From Guillardia theta CCMP2712 (taxonomy: Eukaryota > Protista > Cryptophyta), in the NCBI RefSeq assembly GCF_000315625.1, contig NW_005434579.1, positions 199,713 to 263,712 on the forward strand: a stretch of DNA of 64,000 nt. The letters are read 5' to 3'. Every line of letters starts with the position of its first letter. Position 1 is the stretch's first letter. The notes beneath the pieces are model-generated. The model was not told the origin of the DNA. It was given only the letters and a program-made list of their open reading frames with translations, and made no database searches. The translations under genes were made by a program, and so were the position numbers. This document shows positions 3,529-53,935 of this stretch, piece by piece.

Positions 3529-5469
3529 GACTGATGACGCACAACCTTTGCACGCCAGAAGTTGAACCCACCCCTCCAAATCCATACAACTACCCGGTCC
3601 TTAGCAATCCGGGCCTCGGCAAATCGGCACCCGGCATCGGGTTCCGGGGCCAACTGAGCTGGTCACTAACATAGCCTCTGAGGCGGGTGAGCTTGCTATG
3701 TGTATTCCCCAACTTCACAAACTTCCAGGTGGGTAGTCCAATAGCTGTTTCAATCCAAACATTCTCTACAAATTTTGAAATATTGTATTTTAATTTAAAA
3801 ATATTTTGAATATTTGAAAATTTCTCTCGACACTACCCACTTGTTGAGTATTCCTCCTCCTTCCCCAGTTTCCCCCAGTTTGTTGGACCCCACCCCCCTA
3901 GTTTATCTATACACACGGGTCTTTGCTGTTTCCCGCCTCCGACAACCCCTGACTTATGACAAGGACGGTGCGAGTACCCTAGCTTATTGACAACCTACCC
4001 ACCTTTTTTACTGCAAAAGTACCCCATCCGAAATATATCGACACCACCCTAGCCCGAAGAAATTACCCCTACCCTCATGTCCACTTCAATCTCTTGATTC
4101 CACTACCCCTACCCCTATTAAAATGGAATAGCCCCCATAACGTGTATACCACCCTTGTGCTGTCATGTCCCACCAAGCCTTTGACAGCTTGGGGTACCGG
4201 TATTCATACTACCACTACCCCTTATCTAATGGTACCCCACCCCCGGGGTCCGTGCACGCTCCCCCATGCCGGTTCTTCGACGATGGCTGGCGAAGAGGAG
4301 CAGGGAGGAGTCATGGAGGGAAGGAAAGGAGGCAGGCATTGCAAGAAGAGGCAGAGACGAAGACAACGATAGAAAGAGAAGAACAACAAGCCATAGGAGG
4401 GAGGATGATGTCTTTTACAAAGCGGAGAGAGACAGTATAGGCGTTGACTCACGATAGGGCTGAGGAGATGAGAAGGAAGAATTCGTGCATGATACGGAGG
4501 AGCCAAGAGATCAAGCGTGTGTGGATGTAGAATTAAGTTTGTTCTGAGGTAAGGTGAGCACATTTTTTAATGCAGTGTCAAAGAGTAGACTGCATGGGTA
4601 TTCTTGAGGTGCTCGTTGCCATAAAGGGATTGCATCGCGATCTTTCTTTAGCAATGAAGACAACTACCGTGACAAGTCAGAATGTGTTGAGCGAGATGAG
4701 TGCATTAAACATGCGAGTGAAAATTCTTAAGATCTAGCGTAGACTTTATCGAGGGACTGGTGAAAAAAGAATTGCGTCGTTTGAAGATGTCGTAATGACT
4801 GAGTGATGGAGGGTTGTCAAGAAAGCAAATGAGAAGCAAAGATCACAAAAGAATGATATCCCAGAGGTATAATGAATTAAGGGAGAGAGAAAGAGAAGCT
4901 GAAGTTCTTGATTGAATGGGACGAGCGCAGCAGCAAACTTTGGACTCATGCAGGAAATTTGAGATATGACATGGATCCTCTTGCTATTGTTGTTGCATTG
5001 CAACAAGTTCGTTACTCTCGCAGACTTTCCCCCTTTCATTGGGTCTTGTCTCATGGATTGTATCCCATCTAATTTCCTTGCACTCACTCAAGTCTCTTCA
5101 CAGGTGGCATATATGGTTAGGCCGCAGTTGAAGCAGCGATGATGACAGCAGTGTTGGAGGAAATGCACTATGCTCATTGAAGCCGTGAAGCTGCCCTCCA
5201 TTAGAAAGCTTTTGAAGGAGAAAGCAAGCAGGAGCAATGAGGGCTCGTAGGAAAAAGGATCTCTGAGGAAGCAGCCAGACTCGGGGTCGGAAGGCTTCCG
5301 TCGAGTATTGAACACCACAACAGGGCTTCCCCGTTGGATTGCATAGATTAGGTTCGCTTGATTGTTGGGGAAGGAGAGAGTTGGCACGGGGTCACCTTTG
5401 GTTGGATGCTGGACTGCCGTGTAATCTCATCCTTGGTGTGACCGCGTCAGTCACCATCCTTCGTCAAGG

Positions 5470-7495: not shown

Positions 7496-8659
7496 GATTT
7501 ACCGTCGGCACCAGAGATCCAAATCAGGGGAAGGTACGCAAAAGGAGGCGAAGGAAGAACGAAAATCCAGAGAGATATGTGGAGGGTCGGATGTCAACGA
7601 TGGAGGAGGAGAGACGGGGAGAGAGAGAAGGAAGAAGAAGAGGAAGAGGAGGAAGAGGAAGAGCCGCGACGGAGGGGGACGAGAAGGGTCAGATGCCGCC
7701 AGGTGGTCGTGAGATGCGGGCGATTGGGAGGCGATTGGGACGGCAAACCTACCTTCAAACAGCACCCCTCCTTTTCTCAGTACCCACCCCATGGGGAACA
7801 GATTATGTGTCACCCCTACCCATATAATTACCTTCAATTACCCCTCTATATCAAAGGGATTTCTTGAATCAAGATCAGGATGGGTACCATACAGACCACA
7901 ACCCCTGGTGTTATGTGGCTGTTATACCGTACCCCTCTGGAATACCACGGAAAACCCCCACCCCCTACACTACACCAGGGTAGGGTTGACGGTTGTGAAG
8001 AACGAGGCCGACTCAACCCACCCTTTAATTTTGTGTCAATATACCCCTCCATTTATGCTATAAATAACCCCTACTCAAATATATTTTTGCACCCCCACCC
8101 CACGTTTTTACTCCGCTTCCATGTAGATTGTCATGGACCCAATCTTCCAACGGCTACCGAAGAGGATAATCGAAATAGCACACTTTCAGTTCTTACCTTT
8201 TTGTATATCTATTTTAAAAGCTCTCACCAAGAGGTCGGCTCAAAAAACGCCCATCTATTTTGGCAACCAGTACCCCTAAAAATACCACCCCACCCCCTAT
8301 ATCTCTCTCTGTGTACCCCCTATGGTCCCATGACTTACGCGTTGCATGTCTCAGGATCGTCCCTCTCCCCCAGTTCGGAATAAGTATGAGTGCAGTAGTC
8401 CTCAAACCGCCATTCCTTTTCATAACGCTTTCAGAGTAATTTGAAATTACATTGAAACACTTGAATATCTCCGCGGTTTGCTGGTGCTGTAGACCTTACA
8501 ACAGATCGGACGGTCACGAAGTCACCAATATGGACCCCTATTTTTATTGTTAAAGTACCCCACCTCTAGACAGTGCTGGGAGTATGACCTCAACTGACGT
8601 TCTTATCCATCTGTACGATAAGGCGTTGCCAACTTGAGACTTTTAACGCTTCGGAGTCC

Positions 8660-20063: not shown

Positions 20064-22494
20064 CACCAGGCTCTGCCTTGCATTCGCCTCAAGGTAGGAC
20101 GATAGAAGATTTCGATTCTCTCAAAAAGGCCGAAGATTCGGAGCAGCTTGTTGAGGAGAAATGCAGTGAGATTCTTCGAGCGTTACGAAAGAAAGTCGTG
20201 TGTAAAGAAGGAAAATCTGCGAGTTCAGCGAGAAAGGGAGTGTACCAGAGGGTGGAATGAGTGAGGAACAAACAGGGGCGAGGGCAGGGCAGAGGATACT
20301 GTTGCAGCCAGTCGGAGGAGGAGGAGGAGGAAGAAGGAGTTGGAGGGAAAGGGGTAGAGACGACTGCAAGAGGGCAGGAGCGGCGAGTAGAGGAGGGGTA
20401 AAACCCTACCACCCCACCCCTCAATCCTCACCCGACGGTAGAAAAGATGAAGACACCCCCACCAGACTTTGACCGGAACTAGTCTGAGAACTGTGGGGTA
20501 GTACATGACAGGGGTGGTCTGTGGAAGTCTCGTCTAGGTAGAGCAAAAAGGGGATAAAAAGTGTATTGTAACAAAATTAAAAATAAAAGTAATCATAAAA
20601 CATATTTAAATAAGTCCTTGGGTACGTGGGATACAACTGCACCCTCCGCATTTCTTGTAGTCCACAGGGGTGGGTGGTCATGAGCAGGTCGAGTGTAAAG
20701 AGGGACACTGGGGTGGGGGTAGTAAGATCACGAGATGTTTCCAGTAGGGCAGAGATAAATGGGGTGGGTAGGTGGGGAGATATCAGACTAGGTCATATTA
20801 CCTTCCACATGCCGATGACCCACCTGCACCTATTGAGAATTTCGTCTGTTGAGGGTGGGGTAGAAGCGGAAGCGCCCCCGGTCATGGAGGTGCATGACTC
20901 GGAGTACCCAGGGGTAGGGGTGTGAAGAGCAGTAGGGAAGCAAATTGTGGAAAAGGGGGTGGGTGGCTCAATGGGGTTAAACGATGTCAGCTGGGGCAAA
21001 TTAAAAACACTTTTATAGTTGTCATCAACTTGGTCGTGAATCATGATAGTTTCAAAATCTCATAAGGCAATTACAAACTTCCCCGAGAAAAAGTCTGAAC
21101 AACGACAAAATAGATCGAGATTTAGCGCCTATCGGGTCTCGTGACTGTTGAACATGATACGAAGATACGACGAAGGAGTCATGGCAGCAGTACCGTGATA
21201 GAGATGGTTATGTGATCAATTGCTGTTACTGTGAGCCCCGTGACAGAAAAATACGCTGCAGTGTCTGGTAGATTTTCATTCAATTCTATCGTGTCATTTC
21301 AATTTTTGTGATTAAGTTTGAAAATAGATCTGATTCAAACTTCATTTGAAGAATACGCCCGGATCTCTATGAGATGGATTGCTGACTGAAGCCGTTAAGA
21401 TTGCTTGTGAAAGTTCATTCTTTCAAGGTATCGCTGACTCGAGCTGACCCGTGGGGTTGTGTATCTCGAAATCGCTATAAATTACTTTTTAGATCAATGC
21501 TGATGTCAGCAGAAACAGTTCTATGGCTTAAAACAATTTTAAGCGGTATCTCCCGTAAGTAGTATCTTCTCTCGGAGGACCGACGTCCTCTCGGAGGCAT
21601 CGATCAAAAAAAGACTTCTGGAAAGGGTGGTAAGGAGCCCGAACACAAGGGTAGTCAAGGGATCATGGTCAGCAGAGGGTCGGGTAGGGTCTGTATCTGT
21701 TCGTATCGTGGGCGTGAAGCATTGCGTTCCTGAGACTAGTCACGTTACCCTCCGAGGTCACGTTTCCGACCTCTTTGCCAGCTTCTGCTGCACCCCTCCG
21801 GGAGAAAAAAAGAATGCTTACACTCTTAGGGATATGACCCCCCTAAGCGCTGGATAAGACACCGGTGGGTGCTCCCTTCGCCGGTCAGCAATCCCTCTAT
21901 TGGGCCACACAACTTCTCGTCGACTCGGTGGAAAATATTGACTGAAAATAACAAGCACCACAGCCCAAAAAAGAAGTACATCAGCTTAAAATAAGCGTAT
22001 AAAGCTTGTAACTCAATGTACCCCCCTAAAAATAAGCACGGTAACCTAGAAATAAGCGCTGTAACCATAAGGCATTTTAATAATAAGTTAACCTGCCATG
22101 ACCTCGCTATGGTAAAGCAAGAATGAAACAGCTCAGGAATGTCCAACAAGTGTCCATGCTGCTCGGCAAGATCTTCGGCGACTGCTCCTGCTCTTTCTCC
22201 TGCTCCTCCTTCTCCTCCTCATGACCTGATTGTCGTCTCCGGTTTCTCATGCTCGCCCTACTTGTCGTCTCGTGCGCCGTGCCCTCAACAGCCACGCTGT
22301 ATCTGGTTCCGCATAGCCGTCTTGTCTCTATCAAGTTTAAGCGTATAAAGTGCAAGTAATGTAAATGAAATGTAAGGTCGACTTGAGAGGGAAAACAGGA
22401 GAGTCGCATCGGAGCAGCAGCCTAGCGCAATTTACTTGATCGACGTGCTGTACCGATTTGCAAGGCAGCAACTCAAGTCGACAGGAGCTCAATG

Positions 22495-27134
<4,640 letters not shown>

Positions 27135-48628: not shown

Positions 48629-49987
48629 CTACGGGTGGATGTTGACCGAGATAAACTCGCACGAGGGAGGAGCTGAGAAAGCTTTCGAAGCGAGCATCCA
48701 ATGAAGCATGTCCCTGGAGAACCTGTAGACAGGAGTAGACTTCTCTAGCATCTGGAAAAACTCTTCCCTCTTCGCCTCCTTCAACGATCTTGCAGCCATG
48801 GTGGTCAGCTCCGTCTCCCTGTAGAACTCGTCCAGGCTCTGCACCTGGATCGCGATCCCCGTGCCCTTCCACATCACAGCAGAGATGTGATGCGAGTCCA
48901 CCTGAGAGATCAGCTCCAGCTGCCTCGTCTTGTCACTGACAGGAAGAGCAAGACTTCGGAGCTCTGAGTCACGGAAGCAGAGCGTTCGGATGCGCCTGTG
49001 GAGCATTTCCACCTTCTCGGGCGTCTCCACCAGGAGGCGGATGTGGTACATGTTGTCAAAGAGGTCGTCGCTGGCCCTGGCTTCTGGGTCTTCCACCTCG
49101 AAGATGCTGTCAGCGATCTGCTTCCACAGCTCGTTGCTTGGCTTCGCATGCATCATCACTCGGTGCAGCCCATAGTTGTTGCGCTCAAGAGCATCGAACT
49201 CAACCGCGTGATTCACCACCTTAACCGGCTTCCAGGCACCCTCCGAGTTGACGGCAAGACCATCAATCTGGTTCTCTGCAAGCTCCATGCTCACGGCACC
49301 CTTGGTCAAGGTGGACAGGGGGACGATCTCCGTGAGCTTGAACTCTAGCCCATCATCCGACTTGGCTGTAACGGTACTCCTGCACTCGAATTTCTCCTCC
49401 GACAGCACTGCCGTTATCAGATGTGCCAGCTGCACCATGGTCCTCTGTCCCTCGTTGTAGAAGGTAGCCACCTCATCCCTCACCCGGTTTATCTCCGAGT
49501 ATGAGAAGTCCAGGTCATGGTGTTTGCTGGGACACTCCAGGGCCGCAATGGCCGTGTTATGAATCTGAGCCACCACAGACTGCAGGATCGGCTCCTGCAC
49601 GATAGCGTTGGCCCCAATGCTTGACCGCCTCCTGATCTCATGGCCGACAGCTCGTCGTGATCTGCATCGGATGCCCATGTTTCCCCTGTTGTCAATGACA
49701 GCTGTCTCCCTCTTGGTGCTTTTGACTTCCCCCTGGATCGACTGCACGAAGCTCACACCTGCCTGATCGGGGGACTGCTGGTAGTTGAACTCATCCGCAT
49801 GGGGCTTCGTAGCAACGCGGCAGACAAGCTTCTTCGCTCCAGTGCTGCACTGCTTGGCTTGCGGGCCGGACAGAGACAACAGATGGCCCGCGCCGCTCGA
49901 GGAAAAGCCATGGAAGCCTCGTGTGCACGGTGCCATGGTGGACACCAGGCACACTGCTAGGAGACCCTTGATGGAAGAAGAACCCAT
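48629..49987 (-). CDS. Plastid-targeted intronless protein, degenerate RelA/SpoT-synthetase-like fold; paralog A
   Basis: 452-aa ORF with hydrophobic leader ending TRG-F and a Ser/Arg/Lys-rich transit region. Clearly homologous to 52598-53935. The fold assignment is inferred from motif order only. Confidence 0.8.
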   Translation of the reverse strand: MGSSSIKGLLAVCLVSTMAPCTRGFHGFSSSGAGHLLSLSGPQAKQCSTGAKKLVCRVATKPHADEFNYQQSPDQAGVSFVQSIQGEVKSTKRETAVIDNRGNMGIRCRSRRAVGHEIRRRSSIGANAIVQEPILQSVVAQIHNTAIAALECPSKHHDLDFSYSEINRVRDEVATFYNEGQRTMVQLAHLITAVLSEEKFECRSTVTAKSDDGLEFKLTEIVPLSTLTKGAVSMELAENQIDGLAVNSEGAWKPVKVVNHAVEFDALERNNYGLHRVMMHAKPSNELWKQIADSIFEVEDPEARASDDLFDNMYHIRLLVETPEKVEMLHRRIRTLCFRDSELRSLALPVSDKTRQLELISQVDSHHISAVMWKGTGIAIQVQSLDEFYRETELTTMAARSLKEAKREEFFQMLEKSTPVYRFSRDMLHWMLASKAFSAPPSCEFISVNIHP

Positions 49988-52597
49988 TGTCGACTAGGCG
50001 CCGGCGATCAACCTGGCACAACGTTGTGAGAACAGAGATATCCATTGCTCGGTGAAGGCTGAAGGTCACTGTGATCAGTGTACTACGAAGGGTTCATCTC
50101 CCTTGTTCCTGAAGGGGAAGCACGGAACTTGTCACTGTCCTACTACCGACTGAGATCGTTGTAACATGAAAATAGTAGTTGCAAACTTTCAGATAATCCA
50201 GCAATGAGCAGCCTAACAGCCTTTTGCGGTTTACAACCAGAATTTTCGAATTCCACCAAGATCTTTCATTTCTCTCGATGAGCATACTGGAGTTTACCAG
50301 AACGATCTCAAATATGAGTACAATATTTCATGTCGTGTAGATATCGATAATAGTGAACTATATCTGCTCTTCTCTACTGATCCCCTTCCTCTGACCATAT
50401 CCTGTCCTGGCGGCTGCTCCTGCTCCTGCTCCTGCTGCTACTTGCCCTGCTCTGTAGCTCAGTATGCTCGAGACATTCCTGCTATTACTGCATGTTTTAG
50501 CTTCTGCATCGCCATTCCTCTCACTCTTTAGGGTGTCTGCCTGCCCTTGGCTTCTACCGTACTGTGATTATTTCCGCCATTGATAAGCACGCCTTCAGAG
50601 AAGGTCGAACGAGTGCTTAGGGATAGGGGTAGGGATATCGCAGGCAAAAATAAGGGTAGGGGTGCTTTCAGGTTCTCTGTTCCCAGGGTAGGGGTGTAGG
50701 TGCTTAGTGGGGGTAGGGGTAGATATCCGCAATTGGGTGCAGTGGTAGTGAATTACCACTGGGTGGGGTACTTTCTTTGCGCCCGGATGCACCCGGTAGA
50801 TGTCCTTATGTTGCAAGGGTAGGTGTGAGAATGTCAAATAAGGTGGGTACATTTCATTCTCCAAGGGGTGGGGTTCTTCTTGGGAAGGGGGTGTATACTC
50901 GGGATGAAAATCCATGTACTGCAGGGTGGGGTCATGAAAGGAAAGGAGCGGGTGGAGAGGCATTGGGTTCTCCCGGGTGGTACCCCTATGTGATCCTGGA
51001 TTCCATCATATCTTGAACAAGAAAGAGGGGGTAGGGGGTGGTACTGTATTTGGACCTAGAGCCTGCAACAGGTGTAAAAGACAGTTATAAATTACAGCGA
51101 CGCAGTCATAAACTTTGAAACTGAGAGTCCTTAATTTTGAAAGATAAAAAGAACATTTGAAACCTAGGATAAGACTGTACACCTCCAGGAGATGCAAGCT
51201 CACGTCTTTTCAGCTAAGGGAATTTATTAGCTCGGGCGGGCCGGGAAAAGCTGTCGGGCCGACTGAGATCACTCGGAGAAGACAGGACTCTTCTGTTGGT
51301 TATGAGCCTTTTGACCGCGGTATCTCACTGTTTTACTACAGGAAATACCAACGGCGCCTCAGCTCTGAATGGACCCATGTTTACAACGTTTCCGTTTAAA
51401 CCTCGCACTTTAATTGCTAAATTTAGGTCTCCGTCTAAATCGAGCAGCATCGTTTCCGTTAGAAGGTACGGGTACGCAAATGATGAGTACTGGTGGTTAT
51501 ACCAGAACATCGCTGGAAGATAACGGGTAGGGCCAAAAGCTGTAGTCCATGGGGTGGTATTCGGACGCAAAGTTTCTTGTCGATTTCCATGTAAATATGA
51601 ACACCCCCTCTTTTTACCAGGTAATGTGGGGTCCTTGAAGGACAGGGTGGCACGGGTCAAAGGGTCTGCAACAGTTTGAACGAGGATGTCTCAATATAGT
51701 TTTTGTTTGCCCCATACCGCGAGGTTTGGGGTAAGTTGGTCTGATCTCCGGGGGACACTTACCTGAACAGATGCGACTATTCACTTCTATCTTGTCAAAG
51801 ACTACGAGTTCGTGTCGTTTAGAACCTTATAAAAGCTTTTTATATGGTAATCGTTCTTGTATCGTAGGCCTTTCGTCATCATTCAGCCGCATGCGAGTAT
51901 TAAATTGATTTTAAAATGATTTAGCAGCCACTCATACCCAAATTTAGATACGATTCCTTTGGTTCCAAGAGCCGTTTTCGGGGGTGGGTGTAAAGAGTAC
52001 CCACGTCTTATACCTATTCCCCAGGTTCTTTCGGGGGTGGGTCCGAAGATGTACCCCTTTACTGCCTCGCTTCAGACTGCAACAACCGTTTTTAGAACCT
52101 GGTTCAAATTTTCGATCAACATTTTCGAACAGTTGAACAAATGTGTTCAATACATTTGAAATAAATAGACCATTTTGAAGAATGTTAACAAAATTTCCAC
52201 TTTTCAATGGTCATATGCCCACTCAGTACAAGTCATTTTACACTTCTCTTTAAATGTTATTAGAGACGTTTTAAAACAAATGAGCCTCCTTTTAAAAACT
52301 GCTTTTAAGTGACGGGCTGTAGACAGCTGCGCCGAGTGACATGGCGAGGGAATAAGGAAGTGGAGGGGAGCAGACGAGCGAGAAAGACAAGAAGAGGAAG
52401 AGCGATCTAGTGGGCAGCAGCACAACAGAGATACAGAGAGACATAGCAAGCGTTAGAGACAGATAGGAACGTAGACGTACCTGCTCGGAGCACGAAAGGT
52501 ACAGGTTGGGAGCTTTGCAGAGGACGGAAATACACTCTGCGATTGCTGAGGAATAGCGGTTATCTGATACCCACGAATTAGTCCAACTACATTGAAC

Positions 52598-53935
52598 ATG
52601 AAGAAATCTTTCCTTCTCACAATGGCCCTTGCACCTTGGATTGGATGTGTTGCCTTCTCGCCGCAGCTACCATCCTTAGCCCGTCGAAGGACGATGCAGG
52701 GAGCAGGACGGGGGAGGGACCATTTGAACTTGGTGTCGCAAGTCGCAACAAAGGGGAAAGTCACAAAGAATGCCTACAACATCTGGCAACATTCCTTCGG
52801 CTTTGATAGGGAGGAGCTCAAGGATGTCGTTCGGCCGAACCCGGTCCAGCAAGGGATCGACAGTGTGCTGCGGGGAATGAATGCCGGGCATGGAGTTCGT
52901 TTCCGCGTACACAGGGCCATCGGCCATGAAATCCGCAGAAGGGCGCACATTGGGCATGCGTCATTGTTCTCTCCCCCTGTCTTGCAGTCTGTGGTCAACC
53001 AGATCCACGAGGCAGCGCTCAAGGCGTTGAGCTCGCCGTCGGAGAAGAGCGACCTTGAATTCTCCTACGCGGAGATTGCTCTGGTCAGGGATGAGGTCGA
53101 GAACTGTTGCTGCGAGGGCCAGAAGACCATGGCGCAGCTTGCCCAGCTCCTGGCTCACCGGCTGAGCCTTGGCAAGTACGAATGCAGGAGTACCGTGACA
53201 GCATCTGCGGGCCACGGGCTTCAGTTCAAGCTGACCGAGACTGTGCCGACGCCTGTGGTGATCGACGAGCATGACGGGCTTGCTCTTGCTCAGCGCCAGA
53301 TCGACGGTCTAGCGGTGCAGTCGAAAGGAGCATGGAAGTCAGTGGAGCTAGTGGATCACTCAGTGGAGTTCGATGCCACGGAGAGCAACACAGCGGGTCT
53401 GCATCGGGTCATGATGCATGCGAAGCCGAGCAAGGACTTGTGGCGACTCGTGGCCGACAGCCTGTTCGAAATCGACGACCCTGACGCCGAGCCGCTGGTG
53501 GAGGATCACAACATGTACCACATCAAGCTTCTGGTCGAGACCCCCGAGCTTGTCGAGCAGCTGCATCGCTCCCTCCGCACGATTATCTTCCAGGACTCGG
53601 AGCTCCGCGACCTGTCGCTTCCTGTCGCAGACTCCACGAGGCAGCTGGAGCTGATCTCTCAGGTGGACTCGCATCACATCTCTGCTGTGATGTGGAAGGA
53701 GACGGGAATCGCGATCCAGGTGCAGAGCCTGGACGAGTTCTACAGGGAGACGGAGCTGACGACCATGGCGAACCGGGCGAAGAGGAGGGCGAAGCGGGAG
53801 GAGGCGTACCGCAGGCTGGAGAAGAAGACTCCCATCTACCGCTTCTCTCGCAGCATCTTGCAGTGGATGCTTGCTTCGAGGACGTTGTCATCTCCGCCAT
53901 CGTGCGATTCCATCTCAGTGAGTCTGCACCCTTGA
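52598..53935 (+). CDS. Plastid-targeted intronless protein, degenerate RelA/SpoT-synthetase-like fold; paralog B
   Basis: 445-aa ORF with signal peptide MKKSFLLTMALAPWIGCVA-F; colinear with paralog A through to the shared C-terminal ...ISVxxHP*. Confidence 0.8.
   Translation: MKKSFLLTMALAPWIGCVAFSPQLPSLARRRTMQGAGRGRDHLNLVSQVATKGKVTKNAYNIWQHSFGFDREELKDVVRPNPVQQGIDSVLRGMNAGHGVRFRVHRAIGHEIRRRAHIGHASLFSPPVLQSVVNQIHEAALKALSSPSEKSDLEFSYAEIALVRDEVENCCCEGQKTMAQLAQLLAHRLSLGKYECRSTVTASAGHGLQFKLTETVPTPVVIDEHDGLALAQRQIDGLAVQSKGAWKSVELVDHSVEFDATESNTAGLHRVMMHAKPSKDLWRLVADSLFEIDDPDAEPLVEDHNMYHIKLLVETPELVEQLHRSLRTIIFQDSELRDLSLPVADSTRQLELISQVDSHHISAVMWKETGIAIQVQSLDEFYRETELTTMANRAKRRAKREEAYRRLEKKTPIYRFSRSILQWMLASRTLSSPPSCDSISVSLHP

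What the first reader, a model, noticed from the sequence alone, without database searches (positions are those of the whole stretch)
48629..53935. Head-to-head pair of intronless plastid-targeted proteins resembling a catalytically dead RelA/SpoT synthetase
Seen: two divergent ~450-aa paralogs, with no apparent introns in an intron-dense genome, each with a signal peptide + Phe leader. The C-terminal halves follow the motif order of the (p)ppGpp-synthetase nucleotidyltransferase domain: HAKPSxxLW (cf. RxKxxxS), NMYHIRLLV (cf. DxxGxRxxV) and GIAIQVQSLDEFYRETELTTMA (cf. xEVQIRTxxMxxxAExGxAAH). However, the catalytic Asp appears as Asn, the catalytic Glu as Ala, and the KDY...GYxSxH substrate loop is missing. 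Known: plastids use RSH enzymes and ppGpp. Inference: a possibly bacterially acquired pseudo-enzyme retained in duplicate as a plastid nucleotide sensor or regulator, which would be an undescribed branch of plastid stringent-response control.
Basis: partly seen in the sequence, partly recalled or inferred. Interest (0 to 1): 0.8.

Follow-up and report, generated by a model that had tools for sequence, protein, structure and literature searches.

The report
Dead alarmone-synthetase-like plastid protein pair
Two back-to-back genes of the alga Guillardia theta encode probably plastid-bound proteins that keep the fold of bacterial ppGpp "alarmone" synthetases but have lost every catalytic residue checked, while a fourth family member elsewhere in the genome keeps them all. 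This points to an undescribed enzyme-plus-pseudoenzyme set in cryptophyte plastids.

Summary
Window 48629-49987 (-) and 52598-53935 (+) are two uninterrupted ORFs of 452 and 445 aa. They are transcribed divergently and are 63% identical over 355 aa. The genome is Guillardia theta, and each gene has its own ortholog in Hanusia phi.

Neither protein hits Pfam, NCBIfam or PDB by sequence. The link to RelA/SpoT synthetases rests on three results:
- A profile of the pair finds 125 relatives.
- The degenerate clade aligns full-length to an intact-motif, mostly bacterial clade (hhalign 100%, E 1e-48).

An AlphaFold model (pLDDT 88.5) has RSH synthetase domains as its top 11 structural matches (Z 9.6-6.3).

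In A and B the RxK Arg is His, the second Lys is Gln or Leu, the Mg-binding Asp is Asn, the Gly is His, the catalytic Glu is Ala, and the acceptor loop is deleted.

New here:
- The named eukaryotic members are all cryptophytes.
- G. theta has a third degenerate paralog.
- It also has a multi-exon fourth member with all motifs intact and its own signal-peptide-plus-Phe leader.

The function (binding or regulation rather than synthesis) is inferred and was not tested. I class this as a new variant of a known kind.

The parts
48629..49987 (-). Gene A: single-exon CDS of 452 aa plus stop.
   Evidence: ORF. A database protein (P0001) is 100% identical over its full length, and the Hanusia ortholog P0002 is 89% identical.
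52598..53935 (+). Gene B: single-exon CDS of 445 aa plus stop, with ATG at 52598.
   Evidence: ORF. The Hanusia ortholog P0003 starts at the same MKKS. The tree pairs B with P0003 at 100/100 support.
49916..49987 (-). Gene A signal-peptide-like N-terminus (about residues 1-24), followed by Phe25 and a Ser/Gly/Lys-rich stretch poor in acidic residues up to about residue 60.
   Evidence: Maximum Kyte-Doolittle 11-residue hydropathy is 2.39 at residue 9, and the sequence is read. The cleavage site was judged by eye and not predicted by a tool.
52598..52654 (+). Gene B signal-peptide-like N-terminus (about residues 1-19, ...GCVA), followed by Phe20 and an Arg-rich transit-peptide-like stretch.
   Evidence: The Hanusia ortholog has the same layout...GSAA|FAPQ.
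48767..49501 (-). Gene A RSH-synthetase-like nucleotidyltransferase domain (about residues 163-407), including a beta-rich insert before the RxK-equivalent strand.
   Evidence: Structural matches span model residues 65-308, which is plus 99 in the full-length protein.
53066..53797 (+). Gene B RSH-synthetase-like domain (about residues 157-400).
   Evidence: Placed by alignment to gene A.
49118..49153 (-). A 279-290, MHAKPSNELWKQ: remnant of RxKxxxSxxxK. Arg is now His280, Lys282 is kept, and the last Lys is now Gln290. In B the same motif is at 53414-53449, with Leu at the last position.
49025..49057 (-). A 311-321, DNMYHIRLLVE: remnant of the Mg-binding DxxGxR strand. Asp is now Asn312, Gly is now His315, and Arg317 is kept. 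In B the motif is at 53507-53539.
48869..48907 (-). A 361-373, SQVDSHHISAVMW: the site where the acceptor-nucleotide loop (KDY...GW/GY.S.H) is deleted. In B it is at 53657-53695.
   Evidence: Alignment blocks.
48833..48859 (-). A 377-385, GIAIQVQSL: remnant of the catalytic ExQ strand, with Glu now Ala379. In B it is at 53705-53731, with Ala372. This lies in the stretch best conserved between A and B (83-90% identity in 30-aa windows).
49988..52597 (.). The 2,610-bp spacer between the two start codons. I found no further family sequence or long dispersed repeat there. It holds a cluster of GGGTAGGGGT motifs at 50654-50720.

Best explanation

Shown:
- They are homologous over their full length to a mostly bacterial family in which the RSH catalytic set is invariant. 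That family is itself homologous to canonical (p)ppGpp synthetase domains.
- The predicted fold is RSH-type.
- The Arg of RxK, the second Lys, the Mg-binding Asp, the Gly, the catalytic Glu, the His of the ESH motif and the acceptor loop are all replaced or deleted. Canonical pyrophosphate transfer from ATP to a 3'-OH is therefore not expected.
- Both genes are under purifying selection, and their duplication predates the Guillardia/Hanusia split.
- G. theta also has a third dead paralog and a multi-exon fourth member with every motif intact.

Inferred:
- All four proteins enter the complex plastid through a signal peptide followed by a transit peptide that begins with Phe.
- The dead copies arose inside cryptophytes by duplication of an enzyme of bacterial type.
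- They now work by binding rather than catalysis. The most likely ligands are a phosphate-bearing molecule (ATP, an alarmone or RNA) held at the former active site, where several basic residues and the strongest A/B conservation remain, and/or the intact paralog, whose output they would modulate.
For: Homology chain: the profile search finds 125 relatives. The degenerate clade against the intact clade gives hhalign 100%, E 1.2e-48, over 323 columns. The intact clade against canonical RSH domains taken from the same bacterial genomes gives 96.9%, E 1.8e-10, with motifs in register. Fifteen of 39 family members hit PF04607.

Fold: model pLDDT is 88.5 and pTM 0.86. The top 11 of 48,161 chains are all RSH synthetase domains: SAS1 Z 9.6, Rel 9.3, RelP 9.0, SAS2 8.9, CapRel 8.0, down to Z 6.3. 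Other Pol-beta-fold transferases score 6.1 or less. The ranking was the same with the first, weaker model. The language-model search gives RelA_SpoT-bearing clusters first, with score 0.94 and 203 shared features.

Residues: R, K, K, D, G, E, Q and H are invariant in all 20 intact members. In none of the 19 members of the two degenerate clades is the Glu, the Gly, the second Lys or the His kept.

Selection: dN/dS is 0.27 between A and B. Hanusia orthologs are 92-95% identical in the core.

Intact paralog: the exons on G000:C7 carry SRIKAEEEIWNKV, KDVFGLKIVV, EVKDYL, SGWRALK, IEIQIQ and ESHSEFK. Its leader reads ...PAQAG|FPGSS.

Leaders of the signal-peptide-plus-Phe/Tyr type are also seen in the Hanusia (B ortholog P0003), Rhodomonas and Proteomonas members and in several unnamed clade members.

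Single cryptophyte origin is not rejected (AU p 0.52).
Against: A and B do not reach any Pfam, NCBIfam or PDB sequence threshold on their own. The direct profile comparison to canonical RSH domains is insignificant (probability 1.1%, E 0.047), so membership rests on a transitive chain. Foldseek gives only weak E-values of 0.04-0.3, and structural Z of about 9-10 is moderate.

Localisation rests on reading the leaders by eye and on textbook knowledge of cryptophyte targeting. No ligand, partner or activity was tested, and the A-B complex prediction gave no verdict.

The free tree puts the two degenerate clades outside the intact clade rather than beside the intact cryptophyte sequence. Descent from the intact paralog is therefore allowed but not shown.
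Confidence: 0.7

Rival explanations
1. A and B are still enzymes. They would use a rebuilt active site, or a different chemistry or substrate, on the same fold.
For: The former active-site strands are the best-conserved part between A and B, at 83-90% identity. Lys282, Arg317, Gln381 and a new Arg400 remain near the old site. A and B carry several His residues there (His280, His315, His366-367).
Against: Those His residues are not conserved in the rest of the degenerate clade. Positions that are invariant in the intact clade vary freely across the degenerate clades, which is the pattern of relaxed catalytic constraint. No alternative acidic pair for metal binding is conserved.
Confidence: 0.08
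2. A and B are functionless duplicates on their way to decay.
Against: Both ORFs are intact. dN/dS is 0.27 with dS about 1.1. Each has an ortholog in Hanusia phi protein sets from transcriptome-derived collections, 92-95% identical in the core. The degenerate clade has at least 16 members, with further subclades in Rhodomonas and in metagenomes.
Confidence: 0.04
3. The proteins are dead RSH-like paralogs but are not stromal. They would stay in the ER or periplastidial compartment, or be secreted.
For: Only a signal-peptide-like stretch is evident. The cleavage sites were not predicted with SignalP or ASAFind. Gene A's site (TRG|F) is less canonical, and its Hanusia ortholog sequence lacks the hydrophobic start.
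Against: An aromatic residue follows the hydrophobic stretch, and then comes a basic, hydroxylated, acid-poor region. This pattern recurs in A, B, the third and fourth G. theta members, and the Hanusia, Rhodomonas and Proteomonas homologs. From established knowledge, this is the rule for stromal import in cryptophytes.
Confidence: 0.15
4. The likeness to RSH enzymes is only a shared generic nucleotidyltransferase fold, without specific common descent.
For: The direct A7-A6 profile comparison is insignificant. Foldseek E-values are weak. Other Pol-beta-fold proteins also match at Z 5-6.
Against: Both links of the chain are significant and keep the five motifs in order. Intact family members reach or approach Pfam's RelA_SpoT cut-off, at 16-32 bits against a cut-off of 27. 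All 11 best structural matches are RSH proteins.
Confidence: 0.03

Closest known systems
Small alarmone synthetases RelQ/SAS1 and RelP/SAS2, and the synthetase domain of long Rel/RelA/SpoT (Pfam PF04607).
   Same: They share the nucleotidyltransferase core and the same order of five motifs. They are the best structural matches, with Z 9.6-8.9 over 135-143 aligned residues. Like the SAS enzymes, A and B are single-domain proteins.
   Different: All catalytic and substrate-contacting residues checked are replaced and the acceptor loop is deleted. A and B carry an extra beta-rich insert and an N-terminal helical region, and they have no Pfam hit.
An unnamed intact-motif SAS-like family of about 350-370 aa in Acidobacteriota (Vicinamibacterales), Bdellovibrionota (Oligoflexus), Myxococcota and Chloroflexota. 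The G. theta gene on G000:C7 also belongs to it.
   Same: Homology runs the full length, including the N-terminal region, the insert and the C-terminal PP...V tail (hhalign E 1.2e-48).
   Different: These members keep R, K, K, D, G, E, Q and H invariant and are presumably active. The bacterial ones have no leader. I could not match the family to a named RSH subfamily of Atkinson 2011 (PMC3153485) or Jimmy 2020 (PMC7229694). I found no conserved small downstream gene of the toxin-antitoxin kind.
Catalytically inactive domains inside known RSH proteins: the inactive hydrolase domain of RelA (PMC3153485), the non-functional hydrolase domain of plant RSH4/CRSH (PMC10107265), and, from my own knowledge, the inactive synthetase domain of Arabidopsis RSH1.
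   Same: An RSH catalytic fold is kept after activity is lost, within plastid or bacterial alarmone systems.
   Different: Those are dead domains inside multi-domain enzymes that keep another active domain. Here the whole stand-alone protein is the dead domain, and the active copy is a separate gene.
Non-catalytic nucleotidyltransferase-fold proteins such as NF45/NF90 (DZF domain), RsfS/Iojap and Utp22.
   Same: They have a Pol-beta-type fold without catalytic residues and act by binding a protein partner, a ribosome or RNA. They appear among the weaker structural matches at Z 4.8-5.5.
   Different: There is no specific sequence or profile relationship. They serve only as precedents for how a dead transferase fold can work.
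Receptor-fused RelA/SpoT-like domains of G. theta, noted elsewhere by this scan (for example s1-442505 and s1-436893).
   Same: They come from the same genome and the same superfamily.
   Different: They are a different family. Searches of the genome with gene A and with the family profile found only four members, none of them fused to a receptor. Those notes describe membrane proteins that retain catalytic residues. I did not check them.

Membership tests
RSH superfamily, synthetase domain (PF04607 RelA_SpoT) | Sequence match to the family model above its curated cut-off. | tested here: not met
   A and B give no Pfam hit at E up to 1. Intact relatives score 16-32 bits against a cut-off of 27.
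RSH superfamily, synthetase domain (PF04607 RelA_SpoT) | Common descent, shown by significant profile-profile links. | tested here: met
   A7 against A4 gives 100%, E 1.2e-48. A4 against canonical A6 gives 96.9%, E 1.8e-10. The direct A7-A6 comparison is insignificant.
RSH superfamily, synthetase domain (PF04607 RelA_SpoT) | RSH-type Pol-beta-like nucleotidyltransferase fold. | tested here: met
   The model has pLDDT 88.5. The top 11 structural matches are all RSH proteins, Z 9.6-6.3.
Active (p)ppGpp/(p)ppApp/tRNA pyrophosphokinase | RxKxxxSxxxK motif for binding ATP phosphates. | tested here: not met
   A has H280-A-K282...Q290 and B has H274-A-K276...L284.
Active (p)ppGpp/(p)ppApp/tRNA pyrophosphokinase | Mg-binding Asp of the DxxG/AxR strand. 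| tested here: not met
   It is Asn312 in A and Asn305 in B, and the Gly is His.
Active (p)ppGpp/(p)ppApp/tRNA pyrophosphokinase | Acceptor-binding loop (KDY...GY/GW.S.H/K). | tested here: not met
   The loop is deleted in A and B at SQVDSHHISAV.
Active (p)ppGpp/(p)ppApp/tRNA pyrophosphokinase | Catalytic Glu of the ExQ strand. | tested here: not met
   It is Ala379 in A and Ala372 in B. It is never Glu in the 19 degenerate members and always Glu in the 20 intact ones.
Active (p)ppGpp/(p)ppApp/tRNA pyrophosphokinase | Measured pyrophosphate transfer. | not testable with these tools
   This needs an enzyme assay.
Cryptophyte nucleus-encoded stromal plastid protein (bipartite leader) | N-terminal hydrophobic signal peptide. 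| tested here: met
   Maximum hydropathy over 11 residues is 2.39 for A and 1.91 for B, within the first 20 residues.
Cryptophyte nucleus-encoded stromal plastid protein (bipartite leader) | Aromatic residue (Phe) at the first position after signal-peptide cleavage, followed by a transit-peptide-like stretch. | tested here: inconclusive
   Phe follows the hydrophobic stretch in A, B, the third and fourth G. theta members and several homologs, and Tyr does so in Rhodomonas. The cleavage sites were read by eye, and no SignalP or ASAFind was on hand.
Cryptophyte nucleus-encoded stromal plastid protein (bipartite leader) | Demonstrated import into the plastid. | not testable with these tools
   This needs reporter fusions or proteomics.
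Pseudoenzyme (a conserved, non-catalytic paralog of an enzyme) | Catalytic residues are lost, purifying selection is retained, and an active-type paralog is present. | tested here: met
   Residue table. dN/dS 0.27. Orthologs in Hanusia. Intact-motif member on G000:C7.

The most novel reading that the evidence does not exclude
Cryptophyte plastids run a second, unrecognised alarmone-type module beside the canonical RSH enzymes. It would consist of one active SAS-like enzyme of bacterial type (the G000:C7 gene) and three non-catalytic paralogs (A, B and GUITHDRAFT_120935). The dead copies would bind a nucleotide or alarmone, or the enzyme itself, and so set the enzyme's output, much as pseudokinases control kinases.
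Probability: 0.2. Interest if true: 0.75.

Novelty: new variant of a known kind. Interest (0 to 1): 0.58.

Why it matters
ppGpp signalling in plastids is currently described through the RSH1, RSH2/3 and RSH4/CRSH families (PMC10107265). I found no paper on cryptophyte RSH-like proteins of this kind, nor on stand-alone dead alarmone synthetases.

If the reading holds, it adds three things:
- A divergent SAS-like family that standard domain models largely miss, in bacteria and in a eukaryote.
- The first case I know of where whole RSH-fold proteins became conserved pseudoenzymes.
- A defined four-gene set (one intact, three dead) for testing how a complex plastid tunes nucleotide signalling.

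It also gives a concrete example for studying how pseudoenzymes arise after gene transfer and duplication.

Tried and rejected
- **Direct sequence searches of A and B.** Pfam, NCBIfam and PDB gave nothing.
- **Word-based protein search.** It found only the two Hanusia orthologs.
- **Family profile against PDB.** No RSH hit.
- **Foldseek against PDB.** Only weak rows for either model, although SAS enzymes dominated them.
- **Atlas fold search.** TM below 0.5.
- **Complex prediction of A with B.** It returned no verdict, so it is no evidence either way.
- **Hanusia nucleotide sequence.** None was on record, so dN/dS could be computed only between the paralogs.
- **First attempt to scan genomes.** The 20-sequence alignment failed for lack of a conserved stretch. 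A narrower alignment worked.
- **Toxin-antitoxin layout in the bacterial family.** One contig has a small overlapping downstream ORF, but 77 of the 80 loci in which the family ORF could be located show no conserved neighbour, so I dropped the idea.
- **A conserved His cluster as a new active site.** It is confined to the Guillardia/Hanusia subclade, so I dropped it.
- **My own labelling error.** In the tree I labelled P0024 and several unnamed metagenome proteins 'bacterial'. P0024 is in fact the cryptophyte-type ortholog of the G000:C7 gene. Only P0018 and the GTDB loci are verified as bacterial.
- **Exons of the G000:C7 gene.** I read and searched them piece by piece and did not join them into a spliced model.
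Full report
**What is there.** The window lies in the nuclear genome of Guillardia theta CCMP2712. The genome is 87 Mb in 669 contigs, and a family member is named GUITHDRAFT_120935. One search lists an ATG-started ORF at 48629-49987 on the minus strand (gene A, 452 aa). It also lists an ORF at 52592-53935 on the plus strand, whose first ATG is at 52598 (gene B, 445 aa). The two proteins are 63% identical over 355 aa, with E 5e-162. The DNA similarity (71-76%) is the longest inverted repeat in the window and stops at the two stop codons. The genes are transcribed away from each other, with 2,610 bp between their start codons.

**Gene models and selection.** Each gene has its own ortholog in Hanusia phi, in protein sets from transcriptome-derived collections. 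P0002 is 89% identical to A overall and 95% in the core, and P0003 is 92% identical to B in the core. Both are collinear with the genomic ORFs without gaps. A database protein of 452 aa is identical to ORF A. The coding sequences therefore have no introns. By contrast, the canonical RSH genes of this genome and the fourth family member match only exon by exon. Between A and B the core has dN 0.31, dS 1.14 and dN/dS 0.27. The tree puts the A/B duplication before the Guillardia/Hanusia split, at 100/100 support. Both copies have been kept under constraint.

**Relationship to RelA/SpoT enzymes.** A and B hit nothing in Pfam, NCBIfam or PDB by sequence. A profile built from A, B, the Hanusia pair and a distant G. 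theta paralog was scored against 1.84 billion representatives. It found 125 proteins at E 0.001 or better.

These proteins fall into three groups, which the tree separates:
- Clade I has 16 rows, including A and B (100/100).
- Clade C has 4 rows, including GUITHDRAFT_120935 (100/99).
- An intact-motif group has 27 rows (96/98).

Fifteen of the 39 full-length members aligned for the Pfam scan (a subset of the tree rows) hit PF04607 RelA_SpoT. All of these are in the intact group, at 16-32 bits against a cut-off of 27.

I took canonical RSH synthetase domains from five bacterial genomes that also carry the new family. The intact group aligns to them with hhalign probability 96.9% and E 1.8e-10, motif by motif. 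Clade I aligns to the intact group over 323 columns with probability 100% and E 1.2e-48. The direct comparison of clade I with canonical domains is not significant (E 0.047), although it falls in the same register. Membership in the superfamily is thus shown by a two-step chain and not directly.

**Fold.** With a 5-sequence alignment the AlphaFold model was mediocre (pLDDT 70). Even so, its nine best matches among 48,161 representative PDB chains were all RSH proteins, at Z 10.0-7.6. With 39 sequences the model reached pLDDT 88.5 and pTM 0.86. The top 11 matches were then:
- SAS1, Z 9.6 (137 residues aligned, rmsd 3.1)
- Rel, 9.3
- RelP, 9.0
- a second B. subtilis Rel entry, 8.9
- SAS2, 8.9
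- CapRel, 8.0
- SpoT, 7.5
- an exported SAS, 7.3
- RelA, 7.2
- Tas1, 6.8
- SpoT, 6.3

Other Pol-beta-fold transferases followed at 6.1 or less. Foldseek gave only weak E-values, again mostly for SAS enzymes. The language-model search put clusters carrying RelA_SpoT first.

**Catalytic residues.** Using the hhalign registers, I tabulated nine positions across 39 sequences. In all 20 intact members the Arg and Lys of RxK, the Lys ten residues on, the Mg-binding Asp, the Gly three residues after it, the Glu and Gln of ExQ, and the His of ESH are invariant. In the 19 members of clades I and C, the Glu, the Gly, the second Lys and the His are never kept, and the Asp survives in four.

| Position | Gene A | Gene B |
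|---|---|---|
| Arg of RxK | His280 | His274 |
| Lys of RxK | Lys282 (kept) | Lys276 (kept) |
| Second Lys | Gln290 | Leu284 |
| Mg-binding Asp | Asn312 | Asn305 |
| Gly | His315 | His308 |
| Catalytic Glu | Ala379 | Ala372 |
| His of ESH | Arg400 | Arg |

The KDY...GW loop is deleted in both proteins. Some basic residues near the old site are widely kept: the Lys/Arg at the RxK Lys position, the Arg/Lys of the DxxGxR strand, and an Arg at the old His position. The stretch around the former catalytic strands is the best conserved between A and B, at 83-90%. This is why I favour a binding role over a purely structural relic, but that is inference.

**Who has the family.** The intact group is bacterial wherever I could check. 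P0018 sits on a 47-kb contig with compact bacterial genes. A scan of one genome per GTDB species found 272 loci, in Acidobacteriota (many Vicinamibacterales), Bdellovibrionota including Oligoflexus tunisiensis, Myxococcota and Chloroflexota. The named members of clades I and C are all cryptophytes: Guillardia, Hanusia, Rhodomonas salina and Proteomonas sulcata. The rest come from unnamed metagenome or run assemblies.

**A fourth member with intact motifs.** Searching the G. theta genome with the intact-group profile gave A, B, the C203 gene and a fourth locus on G000:C7, at about 89,100-91,160 on the minus strand. That locus is split into at least seven exon pieces. Read piece by piece, it carries SRIKAEEEIWNKV, KDVFGLKIVV, EVKDYL, SGWRALK, IEIQIQ and ESHSEFK, which is the full catalytic set. 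Its first exon opens with a hydrophobic stretch ending ...PAQAG, followed by Phe and a Ser/Pro/Ala-rich stretch.

P0024, which I had first counted as bacterial, is the ortholog of this gene in a related alga. It is 89% identical in the last exon and has a similar leader with Tyr.

In the free tree P0024 lies inside the intact group, while clades I and C lie outside it. Forcing clade I, clade C and P0024 into one clade costs no likelihood (lnL +1.46, AU p 0.52). A single acquisition by a cryptophyte ancestor, followed by duplications and loss of catalysis in two lineages, is therefore allowed but not demonstrated. The direction of transfer, from bacteria to alga, is inferred from the wide bacterial and narrow eukaryotic distribution.

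**Targeting.** A, B, the C203 protein, the C7 protein and several homologs share one N-terminal layout. A hydrophobic stretch sits in the first 25 residues. It is followed by Phe (Tyr in Rhodomonas and P0024) and then by a basic, hydroxylated region with few acidic residues. From established knowledge of cryptophyte and diatom plastid import, a signal peptide followed by a transit peptide beginning with an aromatic residue marks stromal proteins. I had no SignalP or ASAFind, and no reporter data exist here, so stromal location is likely but unproven.

**How it most likely works.** Two things are shown: these are conserved, non-catalytic RSH-fold proteins, and the same genome keeps an intact-type paralog and two canonical RSH loci. 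The rest is inferred. After import into the plastid, A and B would act by binding. The candidate partners are a phosphate-bearing ligand at the vestigial donor site and the active paralog. The second idea draws on two precedents that I state from my own knowledge: other pseudoenzymes act this way, and RelQ/RelP-type enzymes work as oligomers. The loss of the whole acceptor loop argues against a ppGpp-synthetase-like grip on GTP or GDP, so a 'ppGpp sensor' is only one of several options. I put about 0.85 on 'dead RSH-fold paralogs', about 0.7 on plastid location, and about 0.3 on any particular binding mechanism.

**Comparison with what is known, and novelty.** The RSH surveys I could read list no cryptophyte group and no stand-alone dead synthetases (PMC3153485, PMC7229694). 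The plant and algal ppGpp review describes only RSH1, RSH2/3 and RSH4/CRSH (PMC10107265). Full-text searches for Guillardia with ppGpp, RSH or alarmone, and for pseudoenzyme with small alarmone synthetase, found nothing relevant.

Other notes of this scan describe receptor-fused RSH-like domains in G. theta. Those are a different family, and I did not check them.

I class the finding as a new variant of a known kind: a member of the RSH superfamily by descent, but not a synthetase.

Noticed in passing
G000:C7 about 89,100-91,160 (-); loci L104-L110: A fourth G. theta family member. It is multi-exon, carries every RSH catalytic motif intact, and has a signal-peptide-plus-Phe leader. It is probably the active enzyme of the family. 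P0024 (467 aa, from a metagenome) is its ortholog in a related alga.
   Followed up: partly
G000:C203 (L003:1450-2538, -); protein P0127, 719 aa (GUITHDRAFT_120935): A third, more divergent dead paralog, with a signal-peptide-plus-Phe leader (...SQA|FRPAP). Ahead of the RSH-like domain it has a region of about 350 aa with no Pfam hit. Its relatives P0015-P0017 include one from Proteomonas sulcata.
   Followed up: partly
window 50654-50720; also 4065-4114, 7812-8100, 20711-20921, 23245: The motif GGGTRGGGGT occurs 11 times in the window, against 0.19 expected by chance. The copies sit in five places (four clusters and a single copy), and one cluster of three lies in the spacer between genes A and B. 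It could be a dispersed element or a regulatory motif.
   Followed up: no
gene A residues 55-61 (window 49805-49825) and gene B residues 46-52 (window 52733-52753): A short LV..VATK motif at the end of the leader is shared by A, B, their Hanusia orthologs and, in similar form, P0008. It may mark the transit-peptide processing site or the mature N-terminus.
   Followed up: no
loci L010-L089 (bacterial genomes): A widespread bacterial SAS-like family of about 350-370 aa, found at 272 loci in one-genome-per-species data. It sits at or below Pfam's RelA_SpoT cut-off, so it is probably under-annotated. The same genomes also carry canonical long RSH genes.
   Followed up: partly
L008:9104-9382: A 92-aa ORF overlaps the 3' end of the bacterial family gene P0018 by 4 bp, which looks like a toxin-antitoxin pair. 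The arrangement is not conserved in the 77 other bacterial loci where the family ORF could be located.
   Followed up: yes
proteins P0009 (601 aa) and P0157 (813 aa): Some clade I members from metagenomes carry long N-terminal extensions with no Pfam hit, so the dead domain also occurs in larger proteins.
   Followed up: no
window about 23252-23280: A run of N (an assembly gap) follows a long (CTCC)n tract. Trinucleotide and tetranucleotide simple repeats are very abundant across the window.
   Followed up: no
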